Origin: Selaginella moellendorffii
Lineage: Eukaryota > Plantae > Lycopodiophyta
DNA length: 64,000 nucleotides
Reading direction: 5' to 3'
Assembly: GCF_000143415.4 (NCBI RefSeq)
Contig: NW_003314271.1
Location: forward strand, 1,904,806 to 1,968,805
The stretch's first letter is position 1; every line of letters starts with the position of its first letter. The notes beneath the pieces were generated by a model. It searched no databases, was not told where the DNA came from, and saw only the letters and a program-made list of their open reading frames with translations. Shown here piece after piece: positions 39,836-47,865 of the stretch. A program made the position numbers and the translations under genes.

Positions 39836-40228
39836 TCAAGACACTTCTTTTGGGGCTACTTCTTTTGGGGGATTTGCATCTCCCTTTGGAGGCTCCGGCC
39901 AGTACGAGGTCGCCTTTCCACTCTTTGACACCGCCTCTAGCACTTGTTCCGGCTTGAGGCTGCTCGTTGTCACCGAAACTTTTTGCTCCTTGAGATCAAT
40001 CTCGAATTTGTCCACTCCTGCGAAACCAACAGAGTCGATCTAGAAGCTTTCGAGCAGCAAAAATGGAGTAACAAACCTTCCAGCTTGCCAAGGACTCGCT
40101 TCACTGCACCAACACATCCCTGACAGGACATTGCCACTTTGAGCTCCACAATCTGGAATGAAAGCAAGAAAAAAAATTTCAACAATTGGGAAAGCAAAAG
40201 AAACCGAGCTAGTCCAAACCTCCGGCAT
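39836..40228 (-). CDS. Copper chaperone ATX1/CCH-like (HMA domain)
   Basis: MPE|[25 protein letters not shown]|[14 protein letters not shown]...[11 protein letters not shown]; contains the MxCxxC motif. Confidence 0.93.
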
Positions 40229-40350
40229 GTTGCTGATGAGTGAAGCTGCAATAAAATCGTTGGCCCTTTCACCTTCGATAATGTCACCTATTAAAGTACC
40301 TGAGTGTGGTCCACTCTACAGTTTCAAGAACTTTAACCAGAGTCCGATCT

Positions 40351-43300
40351 TTACAGCCATTGCGCGTTTACGTTTTCTTTCAGCTCACTGAAACAAATAC
40401 GAGTTATAGATTATACATAAGAACACAAAGCCATACCAGATACTCTTCAAGAATGGACTCGTTCCCGGCTCCTCGATCTTTGGAAAACATCCAGAAATCC
40501 ATAGACGCTCCCAGGTGGATAGGGGCTGAAGTATGTTTTTCACACTGCATGAACGCAATAGTCAAGTACTCTAGATACAAAAAGGCCTTACTACCTTGAT
40601 TCGGAAAGCCTCGAAAGTTCCTCAAGCAGACACTCCCTTGCTTCAACCGATACGTGTAGATTGATTAAGGCATCAACCTTGAGACGAGCGTCCATATCCA
40701 TGAGTCCTGCAAGGAAGGGAAAACAATATAAGTAGCTAAGAGAACGTTTAGCACAAGCTCACCAGCTTTAACCAGTCGCGCATCCTTTGTGCTGATGAGA
40801 CAGTCTTGTTGCTCCTTCGATAGAATTGATAGTTTCTCTCCGGTGCTGAGCTCAATATAAGCCATTGATAAGTCCCCATCTTTGGTCAAAAAGCCTGGAA
40901 GGAGAAACTGAACGATGTTTTCATATGAGACCATCTCCCTGGAAGATTCATTTTCGTTGGAGCCAATGAAACCCAGAAGTTTCACCATTGCCTCGACCAC
41001 GATATTTGGAATTTCCATATTATACACAGTACCATCCTCTCGTTTAGAAAATAGCTTCACCAAAGAACCACGAACATCATCCCATTTAGATAAAGGCTGT
41101 GTGCAGACTGTGTTGAAAGCATCCAAGAAAATTCCAAGATGGGAAAAGCATTCTCGCCATTCCAACCTGAAATAATTTCCTTTGCTGATGTCGACAGAAG
41201 GCTAGAGGCCAAAAGTTTCCTTGATACAAGCAAGCGCGCACTGANNNNNNNNNNNNNNNNNNNNNNNNNNNNNNNNNNNNNNNNNNNNNNNNNNNNNNNN
41301 NNNNNNNNNNNNNNNNNNNNNNNNNNNNNNNNNNNNNNNNNNNNNNNNNNNNNNNNNNNNNNNNNNNNNNNNNNNNNNNNNNNNNNNNNNNNNNNNNNNN
41401 NNNNNNNNNNNNNNNNNNNNNNNNNNNNNNNNNNNNNNNNNNNNNNNNNNNNNNNNNNNNNNNNNNNNNNNNNNNNNNNNNNNNNNNNNNNNNNNNNNNN
41501 NNNNNNNNNNNNNNNNNNNNNNNNNNNNNNNNNNNNNNNNNNNNNNNNNNNNNNNNNNNNNNNNNNNNNNNNNNNNNNNNNNNNNNNNNNNNNNNNNNNN
41601 NNNNNNNNNNNNNNNNNNNNNNNNNNNNNNNNNNNNNNNNNNNNNNNNNNNNNNNNNNNNNNNNNNNNNNNNNNNNNNNNNNNNNNNNNNNNNNNNNNNN
41701 NNNNNNNNNNNNNNNNNNNNNNNNNNNNNNNNNNNNNNNNNNNNNNNNNNNNNNNNNNNNNNNNNNNNNNNNNNNNNNNNNNNNNNNNNNNNNNNNNNNN
41801 NNNNNNNNNNNNNNNNNNNNNNNNNNNNNNNNNNNNNNNNNNNNNNNNNNNNNNNNNNNNNNNNNNNNNNNNNNNNNNNNNNNNNNNNCAGCTCGGACAT
41901 GAGAATTCCGAGATACCAATTTATCGGACAGGAACTTCATAACACTAACAGCGTCACCTTCGGAAGCTTTGTCCTCAGAAAACAGCTTTCTCAAGTTATG
42001 TAGAAAATCGTGTATAGGAGACTTGGCAGCTTGAAATATGAAGCGATAGAGGAGCTTGCGCTGCTTTCAAATTCTGATTATTAAAGTTTAGGAGCTGAAA
42101 ACGAAGTTACCTGCCAATCACAAGGCAGCATTCCCAGTACTTCTGGCTGTTTTCCCGCGACCTTCTGGATCCATTCCCAGGCTTCCTTGAAGTCCTGCTT
42201 TAAGGAAAATAGAAATGAAAACCAGCAGGTGATACCTATCATCTGTTGTACCTGCGAACTGACCGTATTACACAAAAAGCTTGGTTCCGTGCAGGAGCGG
42301 ATCCTTCTGCCCAAGTCATAAGATGGCTCGATATCTTTTAGCTCTTCCAAAATGTAAGTTGGAGGTTTTCTTCGATTGGTCTGGGTGTTTAAGAGCATGA
42401 TATTTCCTTTCCATGGTTCCATCACATTCGTGGGCTCGCATTCCAACTCTTTTATCAGAAAAGAGTCTAATATTTCCTCAGCCTTGATATCGTTTAGTAC
42501 AGCCTCTTTGTCTTCAAGGATATCTGCTGCCGACAAACTGCATCAAGCTCAAAAACATTAGAGTCACGTTAACATTCCATGAAAAACAAACCCCGACTTT
42601 GTGCCTTCTGTTATAAGGTACTGCAGAAGATATCTGACTGATGGGAAGTTCTCCCAAACGCTCTTACCAATAGTCGCTGGATTATAAGCAGCGATAACTA
42701 TAATAACTAGGCAAGACCTCCAGTACAAATCTTTTATCTGTCAAAAGTTTCTCAGGTCTTGCAAAACTCAAAGCAGCAATGCTTACGACAAGTTGCGGCA
42801 ATGGCTGCCGAGAGACACTTGGTAAGTAAAACGATGAAAGCTTCATAATCGCTGCAGGTAACTACAAACCAAAATTAGGCAGATAAATCACGATAAAAGC
42901 TTTGATATTCACCTGCAAGCTATCAGCAAACAGCGTCCCGAAGGCATGCTTATCCGAAGCGGCCGCCCGCCACACCAGCTTCTCAATTATGTGAAGAGCA
43001 TCTTCTTGCTGCATCGGGAACTGATTCTGTTTGTTCCTAAACTTCATTACAAGTCCCCAAAAACTCGAAAGAGAGAGAATACCGATATTCCCATCAAAAT
43101 TATTCGCGCAAGTACTTCCTCGGAAGCGTGCATGGAGAATGCAACAAGCTGGAAAGAGTTTAGCTCGACGGTACCACTCGACGATGATAAGTTATATTCC
43201 TGGTGGAAGCGTCAAAATTCGAAAAGCCAATGCACTACTGCCTACCTCAACAGGTTCTAAGAACATAAGCTTCTGTACAGCAGTAGTGAAAAACTTGCAA

Positions 43301-45624
43301 TCTCCAGCGCTTAGCTGTGAGCTAAGCACGTCAACACACCACGTTAACGCTTCCTCCTGAGAACACAAAATAGAAAAAGAGCTTTCAAGTAAGAGAGCTC
43401 TAGAGCTCTTACTTGAAAGGTCATAATCTTCATGCTGAGATCTTTAAAAAGAGGCAATATCTCCTTGAGAGATTCATCTCTAGATCGTTTTCCAGTCGCA
43501 GAAATGGCAACGAGAAATTTTTCATCGGAGGAAAAAGGAGTAGCCGCTTGAATCAGAAAATGGCATGATAGCTCTATCACCTTGTAGCAGCAACCAAGTA
43601 GTAGAGAATTAAAACAAAGGTTGATATCGTTTTGATAATATTCTTACCTGCTTGAACCATGACTGCCTGGCTGAATCCTGCTGCTGCAATATAGAATCCC
43701 AGGGTTCAAGTAGAGCCCGGCATAAGAGACAAGGGCTAATCTCTTTTAGTTGCTTCAAAACCCTGAAGTTTACACGAAACTGAACATGACGAAAACGTTG
43801 ATGAAAACGTACCTGGTCACGGCTTCCTGCAGCCGTCCTACATGATCGTCACTTAAAACCAATTCCTGCACAGCAGCACATTATTCGGAAGAGCATATCC
43901 TTTCTGATGTATTACCTTGATCACTAACGCCAAAGCTCTCTCCGGAGAAAGCGAATCCGGCAAAGCCTTTAAAACAACTGAAATGCCTTTCATATTATGG
44001 GGGCCCGTCGAATTCAGCTCCGCGGTAAGAAATGTCTGAGTATATAAGATTAGCTATCAAACACGCACTAGAAGCGAAGTACCTTTAATGCCAGAGACGA
44101 GTATTCTGGTCTTTTCTGAACTATCTGAATGACAAGCTCTGTATAAAACGAGGTCGACGCATTCTTCATCTGGGAACAGTGCCACGGTTAAGTACTTAGG
44201 CACCAACAAGTCACTAACCTGAGAAACGCCCTGATTCAATCGTAGAGATAAAATATTTGCAACCGTTTCAAAATCTTTCATTGTTGTGCCATTTGTAAAA
44301 TGTAGAACACGATCCAGCAGAAGTTTCGCGCGACGAAAATGGAAGGGAGTATTCAACCAGCCCTCCATCATGCTTGATGCAATGACCCGAACTTCTTCGT
44401 AGTTTACACCTAGTGTCAACATCCTGTAGAGCAGGACTTAGAGATAAACCTCGAAGGAAAAAAAATGTTGAAAACCTTAGAATACGGGGATTTTCTTTGA
44501 TCAATGGAACCTTTAAGAGATGATTGAGGGCTTGCATAAACTCAGCCTTAGCCTTCTGACGAATTTCGTCCCCAGGGTATCGGTTTTTAAGGCTACACTG
44601 CTACATAAAACAAAAAGCATTCCTAGACATGCTGTAAACTGGAAACCGAAGTACCTGAGCAGTATCGCCCTTGACATCTGATGGATCTTCCGTGCCCACT
44701 GTCAGGTCCTAAAAGCAAGAAGCACGTACAAATAAGATGTAAAACCATCGAGCATTACCTCATCAAATGACGTAAGTATGTTAGCGACAAACTCTTTGCA
44801 GTGCTCACTGTCCACCCAGTTACGCAAGTTGATCGCATCGTCTAAGTAGGCCTGCACTCAAACCCAAGCACGAGACCTTCTGTGAGACAAACAGCCACAG
44901 CGTACCTGCACAAATTCTAAAGGCCATTCGGGCTTTTCATTAAAAGCTCGAAACAAGAGCTTGCAAGAAAAACCAGGTAGAAAGTTTTGTTTCTTTGTAG
45001 AAGCCTCAGATGGACTTGAATCAAGGAAGGAAAGCAAAGCCTGGAAAATCCTTGAAAGTGAAAAACAGTCATATCCTTGAGGACGAACCTTGTATGTTCT
45101 TGGAAGACAGAAAGCGTTTGGCAGCTTTTTGGAAATGTAAAAGCAAGTAAGGTACTGATATCTCGGAGGCGAGGATGGAAATCTGCTGATTTCATCAAGC
45201 ACAGACTCCAGAATCTCGTCTAGCCGCTGCCAATTTTCCTGTGTCCACGCGCTCCAAATCGAATGTAGAATATCCAAATCTAAATGAGAGCGTCAAAGTG
45301 AGATGAGGAATCAAGCAAAGACAAAAAAGCACACCTTCGTCAATTCCCAAATCAGCTGCTGGCTCCAGATGCTGCTTGAAAATCTCGCGATGCAAAGCAT
45401 CCTCCTGGCCACTGCCAGCAATCCACTCCTGCCCCTCTTCTTCCGAAAATGGCGCATTGAGATCGAATCCTCGCGGAGTCGCATTCAAGTCGAGCGCCTG
45501 GGCTTGATCTTCCCTGGCTTTCGGCTTGCCGCGACCGTCCTCGTCGTCGTCGGGAGGATGCTGCCTCTGCAAGAACACAAGACGCTTCATCTCTCTGGGA
45601 ATCGAGAAAGAACGTTACCTTCAT
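40351..45624 (-). CDS. INTS1: Integrator complex subunit 1-like (multi-exon; N gap 41245-41888; 3' end approximate)
   Basis: EWPLEFVQ|AYLDDAINLRNWVDSEHCKEFVANILTSF resembles animal INTS1 WP..FVKVY.EDSLGER.WVDSP.C..FV.NI.TAF. Other INTS1-like blocks in order: NRY, EEVRVIASSMMEGWLNTP, IAAYNPATIG..VWENFP, and LEELK...YDLGRRIRSCTEPSFL. Recognised from memory. Confidence 0.8.
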
Positions 45625-46031
45625 CGTCTAGAACCCTAGAAAATGATAAACCCTAGAAATTTCCCGCCTGACGAAACGATCTAATAGCGATCACAGTGCT
45701 CTTTCCACCAGCTACATTGTATAGGCCCCAATCACACAAGATGAGAATGTATAGCAACAATATTTCCAAAAAATATCAAGAAAATGACCGTACGGAAGGT
45801 TTGGGCCGAATGACCGTTTGTGGTCCTGCTAATCTGGGCCCTCCGTATATCCCATGTCTCACACTCACACTCAAGTAGAGCTAGGCTTGGTTAGTTTCTT
45901 TCTTGTTTTCACGCCTGGGGCGGCGGCGGCCGGGCGGCGGTGGCGGCAGCGCGTGTGGCCATCGGCAAGCAGCTGGATCGATCGCGGCGGCCTTGTAGCT
46001 CGATCGTCTCGGCAAATCGATCGATGCAGTG

Positions 46032-47865
46032 ATGTGTCGTGTCCAGGTCGTGTATTATCTCAGCCATGGGGGACGGATGGAGCAGCCGCATCTCATCGAG
46101 GTGGAGCAAGAGGGAAATCGTCTCTACCTGAGCGGTATTTTCAATGGGATCGATCGTCGATATCTTGGACTTGCTGAGATAATTTCGTGTTGCAGAGGTG
46201 AAGAAGCGATTGACGGTGCTGCGAGGGAAAGGCATGCCGGATGCCTTCTCCTGGGCCTACAAAAGGTTCGCTGTGTTCTTTCTTCTCCCCTTTTTATGTG
46301 GTTCCTCGCGTGATTTTCTCTTGCCAGGAGCTACAAGAACGATTTCATCTGGAACGACGTGACAGAGAATGACCTGATCTTACCGCTTCGCGACAATGAG
46401 TATATCATCAAAGGATCGGAGAATGTGTATGGAAGACAAGGTCAGTTTGGTTCTTTGGATGATCTTTCATTCGTTTCGTCCTTCCAGAGAGTCGTAGCGA
46501 TCGGGGAAGAGTTCCAAGCATCCAGGAGGAACACAAGGATTTCGAGAGTCCAATGTCTTATCATCACCACACTCCCATGCGAGCAAGCGAAGGCTATGAC
46601 AAGCGGAGCTCATTGTCTTCTTCTTCCGTCGCTGGCAGCAGATCGCCCAGGAACAGGAACAAAGCTTTCAACTGCGAAGGCGCTCTCAGAGTGAACAGGC
46701 AGCTCATGGAGACGCTCACGCAGGCAAAGACCGAATCCATGGACGAAGTCTTCTACGATAACCCACACTCGGATGGATCAAGCAACGGCAACACTTTCAC
46801 TGACGTCAAAGTGTACAAGACTCCGGCATCTCCTGTGACTGCGGACCACGGCAAGGATGCAGCAACGCAGACGGAGGAGCATTCTGGTAAAAATACTCAC
46901 GAGTTCCAGTTTCACCGAGATGTTCAGCACGATCAGGAGAGAAGCTGTCAACGTGATCAGGAAACTCAAAGCTCCAGGAAGAAGTCTGAGAGAGCTGGTT
47001 TGGTTTCTACCGTAAGGAAGCAACTGGAGGAGAGTAGCCGGAAGCAAACAAGCACTGCGGTTCTTCGGCAGCTGCTCTCCTGTGGTGGGATCGATACGAA
47101 CACTTGTTCCTCCATGCAGTACAACAGGTTGCACTATCCACCGCAAGCATGGGCTTGGAGCAAGTCCAAAGCAGATACCAGGTCCGAAGCGGAGAGTGCT
47201 TCCAAGATTCCACACGATGTTCTTCCTTCTTGGGAGTCTCCTAGGATGCCAGCTCGTTTGGTCAGCTCGAGTCAGGATCCTGAATCTATTCCAGAAGTTG
47301 TGAAGGAAACGACGAACTCCCCGGCTGCAAGCCATGCGGAGCGACGATCCTTGGTAGACAAGGCATCTCGCGAGGAGGCAAGAAAGTTACAGAACAGTAT
47401 GCTTATTGCAACTAAGGAAGCTCGGAAGGTCGAAGACAACAGCCCCCGTCTATCGCCTGCGATAAAACGTGTTAATGTGGAACTTCCAACGCTAAAGGTG
47501 CAGTTCAGCCCCCCGAAAAAGGAAATGAAGTGCAAGGAAGACAGGTAGGACTCCGTTAGTTCGCAAAGTTTCAAACTCCTCTAGCTTTTTCGTTGCAGGC
47601 CTCTAACACCAGGACGAAGCCGACTCGATTGGGAAAAGACCCTCCAAGAGGCTGTCAATGCAAGTTCTCCTCCCGTGGATTTCAGATTGTTGCTGCAAGA
47701 ATGCCCGTAAGTTTCTGCCCGGAGCCGCTTACACTTACTCGGAAGTCTTCTTGTTCTAGGCAATGTGGTCGAACTTTCAAGCCAGATTCTCTGAAGGTTC
47801 ACTTGCGAGGATGTCATGGCCAGAAAACTGGGAAGATAACAAGCGTGGCAAGGCGTCTTGAATAG
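46032..47865 (+). CDS. SOK: SOSEKI polarity protein (DUF966: DIX-like domain, CG motif, C-terminal zinc finger)
   Basis: VQVVYYLSHGGRMEQPHLIEV...DVKKRLTVLRGKGMPDAFSWAYK|RSYKNDFIWND...EYIIKGSE, DAATQT, LRQLLSCGG and C..CGRTFKPDSLKVHLRGC. Confidence 0.93.

What the first reader, a model, noticed from the sequence alone, without database searches (positions are those of the whole stretch)
45447..45494. Tandem EAR-like repressor motifs (LDLNATP, FDLNAP) at the N-terminus of the INTS1-like protein
Seen: two DLN-x(1-2)-P motifs nine residues apart in an acidic, probably disordered N-terminal exon. Established: DLNxxP is a plant EAR motif that binds TOPLESS/TPR co-repressors. Inference: a plant-specific link between Integrator (Pol II pausing/termination) and TOPLESS-HDAC repression. 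I know of no description of such a link.
Basis: partly seen in the sequence, partly recalled or inferred. Interest (0 to 1): 0.7.

Follow-up and report, generated by a model that had tools for sequence, protein, structure and literature searches.

The report
Conserved EAR motif pair on INTS1
The spikemoss version of Integrator subunit 1, the scaffold of an RNA polymerase II termination machine, carries two adjacent co-repressor-docking (EAR-type) motifs in its floppy N-terminal tail; the pair is preserved from zygnematophyte algae to a probable fern, which points to an untested link between Integrator and the TOPLESS co-repressor.

Summary
On the minus strand, 45447-45494 encodes LDLNATPRGFDLNAPF. 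Spliced transcript contigs from four studies show that this exon joins the Selaginella moellendorffii INTS1 mRNA in frame. The public protein XP_024529261.1 has the same N-terminus.

The pair [LF]DLN[AT]xP-x-G-[FL]DLN.. keeps an invariant 9-residue spacing in Diphasiastrum, two mosses, three liverworts, a probable fern transcript and the zygnematophyte alga Mesotaenium. It is the best-conserved island (0.90 against 0.36 column conservation) in an N-terminal tail that otherwise hardly aligns and that AlphaFold2 models with pLDDT mostly below 50 and no secondary structure. Animal and fungal INTS1 lack it. One conifer model (Taxus) shows it decayed. No angiosperm INTS1 was found, and the Arabidopsis literature calls INT1 missing in plants.

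The pair is therefore almost certainly a functional short linear motif of EAR DLNx(x)P type. Binding to TOPLESS/TPR is inferred, not shown. Interest is moderate to high, and the idea is testable in Marchantia or Physcomitrium.

The parts
45474..45494 (-). Motif 1: L27-D-L-N-A-T-P33 (DLNxxP type)
   Evidence: Conserved as [LF]DLN[AT][STV]P in 9 of 9 non-seed orthologues.
45450..45467 (-). Motif 2: F36-D-L-N-A-P41 (DLNxP type)
   Evidence: FDLNAP in 8 of 9 non-seed orthologues; Diphasiastrum has LDLNTQ without P.
45335..45566 (-). Exon 2 (phase 0): codons 3-79 plus the first base of codon 80. Encodes the acidic N-terminal tail, which is predicted to be disordered.
   Evidence: Contig pieces and joints; frame walk; AF2 pLDDT mostly below 50 for residues 1-77.
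45619..45834 (-). Exon 1: 5' UTR (at least 210 nt, with one upstream ATG) plus the start codon ATG 45622-45624 and AAG. An in-frame TAG lies two codons upstream.
   Evidence: sequence; X1 record 1, piece 45619-45834.
45567..45618 (-). Intron 1, 52 nt, GT..AG
   Evidence: adjacent pieces 45335-45566 and 45619-45834 in one contig.
45280..45334 (-). Intron 2, 55 nt, GT..AG
   Evidence: joint 45279/45335 in all four runs.
45513..45533 (-). Basic patch R14-R20 (RGKPKAR). It aligns with the K.RR patch of the orthologues. Possible nuclear localisation signal (inference).
   Evidence: Alignment A1.
45423..45425 (-). W50, a nearly invariant tryptophan about 10 residues after motif 2, following an acidic run
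   Evidence: W50 in at least 90% of sequences.
45088..45279 (-). Exon 3: start of the folded helical-repeat body (DLDILHSIW...), helix from residue 78
44219..44422 (-). Exon 8: core of the INTS1 RPB2-binding domain (PF12432)
   Evidence: exon alone, E = 7e-4; P0001 residues 275-402, 42 bits against cut-off 25.
40743..45834 (-). Extent of the INTS1 gene recognisable in the window. It is interrupted by a run of N (about 41200-41900).
   Evidence: tblastn of Marchantia, Riccia, Physcomitrium and Diphasiastrum INTS1 against the window; N run seen.

Best explanation
The stretch encodes a pair of EAR-type short linear motifs, LDLNATP and FDLNAP, whose cores lie 9 residues apart. [quoted passage not shown] The tail is acidic and predicted to be disordered.

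Shown here: the motifs are translated as part of the INTS1 mRNA. They form a sharply conserved island in a tail that otherwise evolves fast, from a zygnematophyte alga through bryophytes and lycophytes to a probable fern.

Inferred: the pair is a docking site for a TOPLESS/TPR co-repressor. By analogy with other DLNxxP motifs, the contact would be the second WD40 propeller of TPL. Two copies could give avidity on the TPL tetramer. Because LxLxL repressors use the N-terminal TOPLESS-domain groove, one TPL tetramer could hold a DNA-bound repressor and Integrator at the same time, coupling co-repression to Integrator-driven premature termination. Alternatively, Integrator could bring TPL-HDAC to paused polymerase.

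My confidence that this is a selected, functional linear motif is about 0.85. My confidence that the partner is TPL/TPR is about 0.45, and that is the figure given as this explanation's confidence.
For: Presence and frame.

INTS1 identity: PF12432, 42 bits against cut-off 25; source names; gene tree matches the species tree.

Conservation. The pair has invariant 9-residue spacing in Selaginella, Diphasiastrum, Riccia, Marchantia, Calypogeia, Physcomitrium, Ceratodon, the transcript P0021 (sister to the conifers) and Mesotaenium; mean major-residue frequency is 0.90 over the 15 motif columns against 0.36 in the linker; of the 14 residues identical between Selaginella and P0021 in the compared stretch, 7 use different synonymous codons, so the constraint acts on the protein.

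Chance: (3 matches in 128k six-frame codons, 2 of them here).

Disorder.

Motif class: DLNx(x)P is the accepted EAR definition, and characterised instances have varied residues after N, such as DLNSDP, DLNKLP and DLNNLP (PMC9956375). DLNxxP motifs of Jsi1 and ZmERF4 bind the WD40-2 domain of TPL, and a DL-to-AH mutation abolishes the Jsi1 interaction (PMC8126959).

The partner exists across the same range: TPL is present, and its N-terminal region highly conserved, in charophytes including M. endlicherianum (PMC6797205).
Against: No binding or repression data exist for any INTS1.

The third hydrophobic position of the classical (L/F)DLN(L/F)xP or LxLxL core is Ala or Thr here. Binding in the TOPLESS-domain groove depends on three leucines (PMC5457145), so that groove is a poor fit.

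DLNx(x)P motifs are typically C-terminal in transcription factors: only 5 of 65 lie outside the C-terminal quarter. This pair is N-terminal and sits in a non-DNA-binding scaffold.

'DLNA' is absent from the (truncated) table of characterised motifs.

The strict conservation of A, of G35 and of the spacing suggests a more specific recognition than a generic EAR, which could mean a different partner.

Diphasiastrum lacks the proline in copy 2, and Taxus seems to have lost both copies.
Confidence: 0.45

Rival explanations
1. The pair is a conserved functional linear motif, but its partner is not TPL/TPR. Candidates are SAP18 (the other reported EAR-binding adaptor of HDA19 complexes, from my own knowledge), another Integrator or PP2A subunit, RNA polymerase II or SPT5, or the folded body of INTS1 itself (an autoinhibitory tail).
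For: The conservation goes beyond the generic DLNx(x)P pattern: invariant G35, Ala after N, fixed 9-residue spacing, a following acidic run and W50. The third hydrophobic position is Ala or Thr, which fits the TOPLESS-domain groove poorly. The location is N-terminal and the carrier is not a transcription factor.
Against: The core matches an experimentally validated TPL-binding class, including instances with non-hydrophobic residues after N. Animal and fungal INTS1 lack the motif, so it is not part of the ancestral Integrator assembly interface. Its range lies within that of TPL.
Confidence: 0.35
2. The motif pair has no function of its own. The resemblance to EAR is coincidental, and the conservation reflects something else, such as slow evolution, a nucleotide-level element or alignment bias.
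For: Short motifs arise by chance; Riccia has an unconserved DLNTVP at residue 1410. One conifer seems to tolerate its loss.
Against: Nine lineages separated since before the origin of land plants keep both copies and their spacing, while the flanks diverge so far that they barely align. Synonymous codons differ while the residues stay, which argues against a DNA- or RNA-level element. Chance expectation is about 1e-5 per residue.
Confidence: 0.05
3. The tail is a regulatory module for INTS1 itself, such as a degron or a nuclear-import or retention signal. In this reading the DLN pair controls stability or localisation rather than recruiting a co-repressor.
For: The pair sits next to a conserved basic patch (K.RR) that looks like a nuclear localisation signal, and next to a conserved MKR(Q/H) start. 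Ceratodon has an annotated isoform that lacks the whole tail. [quoted passage not shown]
Against: I know of no degron or import signal with a DLNx(x)P core. The acidic motif is distinct from the basic patch.
Confidence: 0.1

Closest known systems
[quoted passage not shown]
   Same: Core (L/F)DLNx(x)P in an acidic, unstructured stretch, conserved among orthologues. For ERF3/4 the motif is essential for repression, and for ZmERF4 the interaction needs TPL WD40-2 (PMC8126959, PMC9956375).
   Different: Those carriers are DNA-binding transcription factors with the motif near the C-terminus. Here the carrier is the scaffold of a Pol II termination complex. The motif is N-terminal, duplicated with fixed spacing, and has Ala or Thr after N instead of L or F. 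Binding is untested.
Fungal effector Jsi1 (Ustilago maydis) and other DLNxxP effectors
   Same: A DLNxxP motif near the N-terminus of a protein that is not a transcription factor. Non-hydrophobic residues follow N (DLNELP, DLNKAP). Jsi1 binds TPL WD40-2, and DL-to-AH abolishes binding.
   Different: These are pathogen mimics with a single copy, not endogenous plant proteins conserved over hundreds of millions of years.
Rice D53 / SMXL EAR motifs
   Same: An LDLN core. More than one EAR motif per protein, and multivalent engagement of the TPL tetramer (PMC5457145).
   Different: D53 EAR-2 is LDLNL, binds the N-terminal TOPLESS-domain groove and depends on three leucines. INTS1 has LDLNA and FDLNA.
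Metazoan and fungal INTS1
   Same: The same family: PF12432 in the Selaginella protein, and PF12432, PF22929, PF22928 and PF22927 in the full-length plant orthologues.
   Different: Mytilus, Oppia and Mortierella INTS1 have no DLN pair. The motif is specific to streptophytes.
Arabidopsis DSP1 complex (the plant Integrator-like complex)
   Same: The plant counterpart of Integrator for snRNA 3' end processing (PMC5079582, PMC10533338).
   Different: It is described without INTS1 ('INT1 ... missing in plants', PMC5079582). The INTS1 studied here exists in seed-free plants, conifers and a zygnematophyte alga, so it lies outside the model on which the plant literature rests.

Membership tests
EAR motif, DLNx(x)P class | Sequence pattern DLNx(x)P, usually preceded by L or F | tested here: met
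   LDLNATP and FDLNAP. Pattern definition from PMC9956375.
EAR motif, DLNx(x)P class | Lies in an accessible, unstructured region | tested here: met
   AF2 on alignment A2: residues 1-77 have block-mean pLDDT of 38-50 and no secondary structure.
EAR motif, DLNx(x)P class | Conserved among orthologues while the flanks diverge | tested here: met
   9 of 9 non-seed orthologues for copy 1 and 8 of 9 for copy 2. Conservation 0.90 against 0.36.
EAR motif, DLNx(x)P class | Binds a TPL/TPR (or SAP18) co-repressor in a motif-dependent way | not testable with these tools
   No complex prediction or binding assay is available. No paper reports it.
EAR motif, DLNx(x)P class | Confers transcriptional repression when tethered to a promoter | not testable with these tools
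   Needs a GAL4-DBD reporter assay.
EAR motif, DLNx(x)P class | Typical (not defining): C-terminal position in a DNA-binding transcription factor | tested here: not met
   Residues 27-41 of a scaffold protein about 2,400 residues long in full-length orthologues. Only 5 of 65 DLNx(x)P motifs lie outside the C-terminal quarter.
Integrator complex subunit 1 (INTS1) | INTS1 RPB2-binding domain (PF12432) above Pfam's gathering score | tested here: met
   P0001: 42 bits against cut-off 25, residues 275-402. Exon 8 alone gives E = 7e-4.
Integrator complex subunit 1 (INTS1) | The further INTS1 domains (INTS2-binding PF22929, R3 PF22927, R4 PF22928) | tested here: inconclusive
   Present in the orthologues that carry the motif: Marchantia, precomputed Pfam. 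In the window only a stretch aligning to Riccia 1261-1387 (41084-40743) was found beyond the N gap, and R3 and R4 were not found.
Integrator complex subunit 1 (INTS1) | Orthology: gene tree congruent with the species tree | tested here: met
   Quick maximum-likelihood tree, with the careful search unfinished: Mesotaenium, then mosses, liverworts, lycophytes, and (P0021 + conifers); animals and a fungus fall outside.
Integrator complex subunit 1 (INTS1) | Assembles with other Integrator subunits on Pol II | not testable with these tools
   Lead only: an earlier scan note reports a full-length INTS5 in this genome.

The most novel reading that the evidence does not exclude
In the ancestor of land plants and their closest algal relatives, the TOPLESS co-repressor and Integrator were physically coupled through this motif pair. 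Part of TOPLESS-mediated repression would then work by Integrator-driven premature termination of Pol II, and not only through histone deacetylation. The coupling would have decayed in seed plants (motif lost in a conifer, INTS1 itself not found in angiosperms), which would explain why Arabidopsis work never saw it.
Probability: 0.3. Interest if true: 0.85.

Novelty: new member of a known kind. Interest (0 to 1): 0.62.

Why it matters
How TOPLESS/Groucho-type co-repressors actually silence transcription is still debated. Histone deacetylases and Mediator contacts explain only part of it.

Integrator is the main promoter-proximal attenuator of Pol II in animals. In plants it is almost unstudied, because Arabidopsis is reported to lack its scaffold, INTS1.

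A deeply conserved pair of co-repressor-docking motifs on INTS1 in bryophytes, lycophytes and streptophyte algae gives a concrete, cheap and genetically tractable hypothesis. Marchantia has TPL (PMC6797205, PMC4447368), and one Marchantia INTS1 came up in the searches here. The hypothesis links the two systems. It also shows that INTS1 is present well outside animals, and that conclusions drawn from Arabidopsis may not hold for land plants in general.

If binding fails, the block is still a strongly selected linear motif whose partner is worth finding.

Tried and rejected
1. Word search with exon 2 alone found nothing. This was expected, because the length filter excludes full-length proteins, so the blank is not evidence of absence.

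2. Atlas look-alike search with exon 2 and with Taxus 430-1500 was uninformative.

3. The bacterial-type promoter and terminator scan is irrelevant for a plant gene and found nothing.

4. I tried to read the conifer N-terminus at DNA level. The Taxus gene spans 312 kb and no DNA was served. Cryptomeria isoform X7 is not on record, and its sequence starts downstream of the tail. The text of the Cryptomeria paper's supplements does not hold the INTS1 alignment.

5. Angiosperm orthologues: none appeared in the exhaustive phmmer search with exon 8 (17 hits in all), nor in two word searches seeded with Riccia and Taxus. With a 68-residue query this is suggestive of loss but not proof.

6. I considered other linear-motif classes from memory (NPF/EH, clathrin box, SIM, B56 LxxIxE, PIP box). 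None fits the conserved core.

7. A recent DNA duplication as the origin of the two copies is rejected. Within Selaginella the copies use different codons for D and L (GAC TTG against GAT CTC).

Full report
**Observation.** The minus strand of 45447-45494 translates to LDLNATPRGFDLNAPF. Motif 1 (LDLNATP) lies at 45474-45494 and motif 2 (FDLNAP) at 45450-45467. In the six-frame translation of the whole window (127,996 codons) the pattern DLNx(1-2)P occurs three times, and two of those are this pair. At that background rate, about 1e-5 per residue, a second copy within a few residues of the first is not a chance event. The two copies use different codons for D and L (GAC TTG against GAT CTC), so they are not a recent DNA duplication.

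**Gene model and expression.** I laid transcript-like Logan contigs from four runs of four studies on 42000-46200. All four show the same set of short (47-67 nt) GT..AG introns on the minus strand. The runs are only guessed to be RNA, but contigs that lack canonical introns can only come from spliced RNA.

- Exon 1 is 45619-45834. It holds the 5' UTR and ATG AAG at 45619-45624, with an in-frame TAG two codons upstream.
- Intron 1 is 45567-45618 (52 nt).
- Exon 2 is 45335-45566 and holds the motifs.
- Intron 2 is 45280-45334 (55 nt).
- Exon 3 starts at 45279.

To check that the frame stays open across exons 1 to 10, I concatenated these exons inside a script and printed the translation. That joined sequence was not sent to any search tool. 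All searches used single exons by reference or database proteins.

The exhaustive protein search with exon 8 alone returned a 100% identical public protein, P0001. This is XP_024529261.1, 'integrator complex subunit 1-like isoform X3' of Selaginella moellendorffii. Its N-terminus, MKRQHPPDDDEDGRGKPKAREDQAQALDLNATPRGFDLNAPFSEEE..., matches the model read from the contigs. P0001 passes Pfam's threshold for the INTS1 RPB2-binding domain (42 bits against 25). The first refutation criterion (exon not spliced in this frame) therefore fails: the exon is part of the INTS1 mRNA.

**Conservation.** The same search and two word searches seeded with the Riccia and Taxus orthologues, plus cluster look-ups, gave full-length INTS1 from several lineages:

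| Protein | Species | Group |
|---|---|---|
| P0008 | Diphasiastrum complanatum | lycophyte |
| P0010 | Riccia fluitans | liverwort |
| P0018 | Marchantia polymorpha | liverwort |
| P0019 | Calypogeia fissa | liverwort |
| P0031 | Physcomitrium patens | moss |
| P0051 | Ceratodon purpureus | moss |
| P0021 | unnamed transcript, SRR32617118 | probable fern (see below) |
| P0012 | Mesotaenium endlicherianum | zygnematophyte alga |
| P0014 | Taxus chinensis | conifer |
| P0058 | Cryptomeria japonica | conifer (N-terminally truncated isoform) |

A quick maximum-likelihood tree reproduces the species tree and puts P0021 as sister to the conifers, so it is probably a fern. The careful search did not finish, so only SH-aLRT supports are available.

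Every non-seed sequence carries the pair with exactly 9 residues between the two Asp:

- Riccia: GFLDLNATPLGFDLNAPV
- Marchantia: GFLDLNATPRGFDLNAPV
- Calypogeia: GFLDLNTTPRGFDLNAPV
- Both mosses: GDLDLNATPLGFDLNAPV
- P0021: GNLDLNAVPQGFDLNAPI
- Mesotaenium: GLFDLNASPTGFDLNAPL
- Diphasiastrum: ADLDLNASPKGLDLNTQA (the only one without the second proline)

In the alignment of the tails (A1) only three islands are conserved: the start MKR(Q/H) with a basic K.RR patch, the motif pair with the following acidic run and a tryptophan, and the entry into the folded domain (LGIDxDLDILxSxW). The 15 motif columns have a mean major-residue frequency of 0.90 against 0.36 for the linker. Between Selaginella and P0021, 7 of the 14 identical residues in the compared stretch use different synonymous codons, so selection acts on the peptide. 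AlphaFold2 on a 10-sequence alignment gives block-mean pLDDT of 38-50 and no secondary structure for residues 1-77, and a confident helical repeat from residue 78. The second refutation criterion (motifs absent from orthologues) also fails.

**Limits of the distribution.** Mytilus, Oppia and Mortierella INTS1 have no such motif. Taxus aligns through the region, but the sequence there reads NVNSGRFDFEFDHASNSPF. The motif therefore looks decayed. This rests on one partial gene model with an unrelated 335-residue N-terminal extension, and I could not check it at DNA level.

No angiosperm INTS1 appeared in any search. [quoted passage not shown] The Cryptomeria gene table shows no Arabidopsis counterpart for its INTS1. 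Loss in angiosperms is thus likely, but I have not proved it.

**What it most likely does.** DLNx(x)P is one of the two accepted EAR consensus patterns (PMC9956375). Characterised instances carry varied residues after Asn, such as DLNSDP in HSI2, DLNKLP in DEAR1 and DLNNLP in JAGGED. [quoted passage not shown] Jsi1 binds the second WD40 domain, and a DL-to-AH mutation abolishes that binding; the ZmERF4 interaction also needs WD40-2 (PMC8126959). LxLxL motifs, in contrast, use the groove of the N-terminal TOPLESS domain and depend on three leucines (PMC5457145). INTS1 has Ala or Thr at the third hydrophobic position, so the WD40-2 mode is the better fit.

TPL is present, with a highly conserved N-terminal region, in charophytes including M. 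endlicherianum (PMC6797205). The partner therefore exists over the whole range of the motif. My best explanation is that the INTS1 tail docks on TPL/TPR, bivalently, and that a TPL tetramer can then bridge DNA-bound LxLxL repressors and Integrator. Every step after 'conserved linear motif of EAR type' is inference.

**Rivals.**
- The partner could be something other than TPL. The extra invariant positions (G35, Ala after Asn, fixed spacing, W50) hint at a more specific recognition than a generic EAR.
- The tail could regulate INTS1 itself, for example its stability or localisation.
- A neutral or chance origin is very unlikely given the conservation.

**Comparison with what is known.** Four full-text searches found no paper that connects Integrator, INTS1 or the DSP complex with TOPLESS or EAR motifs, and none mentions DUF3677. 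I file this as a new member of a known kind: an EAR-type motif instance on an unexpected carrier. It is not a demonstrated new mechanism.

**Earlier scan notes.** One note agrees that this locus is an INTS1 homologue. Another reports a full-length INTS5 in the same genome, which I did not test.

**Rules.** No hand-joined spliced model was sent to a search.

Noticed in passing
window 45930-46134 (+), and 45835-45929: The upstream neighbour is a head-to-head SOSEKI gene. Its first coding exon encodes VQVVYYLSHGGRMEQPHLIEVEQEGNRLYLS and matches Pfam PF06136 (SOK DIX-like domain) at 26.5 bits against a cut-off of 24.3. Transcript contigs of the two genes end at 45834 and 45930, so the shared promoter region is under about 100 bp.
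   Followed up: partly
window about 41200-41900 and 40300-42100 (-): A run of N interrupts the INTS1 gene. The RefSeq models stop at 847-849 residues by reading into the intron after 42111 (P0001 ends ...SFSAPKL). Beyond the gap only a stretch aligning to Riccia residues 1261-1387 was found (41084-40743). The C-terminal R3 and R4 domains, roughly 1,000 residues, were not found anywhere in the window.
   Followed up: partly
window 43812-44035 (-): One run (X13) has a contig that keeps a 50-nt intron, which the other three runs splice out. The retained form has an in-frame stop. It is either an intron-retention isoform or unspliced precursor.
   Followed up: partly
P0022 against P0051 (Ceratodon purpureus): Ceratodon has an annotated INTS1 isoform of 2,286 residues. 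It starts just before the folded domain and lacks the whole N-terminal tail with the motif pair. The 2,447-residue isoform has the tail. This could be a way to make motif-less INTS1, or an annotation artefact.
   Followed up: no
literature: Papers on Arabidopsis state that INT1 is missing in plants (PMC5079582). INTS1 is in fact present in a zygnematophyte alga, mosses, liverworts, lycophytes, a probable fern and conifers. Only angiosperms gave no hit here.
   Followed up: partly
window 39970-40287 (-): Just downstream of INTS1 lies a small gene with a weak heavy-metal-associated (HMA, copper-chaperone-like) domain match: [21 protein letters not shown]00403, 22.2 bits, just under the cut-off of 24.8.
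   Followed up: partly
window 45619-45834 (-): The INTS1 5' UTR (at least 210 nt in the contig) contains one upstream ATG, at position 118 of exon 1 as read on the minus strand. I did not examine whether it opens a conserved uORF.
   Followed up: no
window 12423 (+ strand, frame 3): This is the only other DLNxxP match in the six-frame translation of the window ([12 protein letters not shown]). I did not check whether this frame is coding.
   Followed up: no
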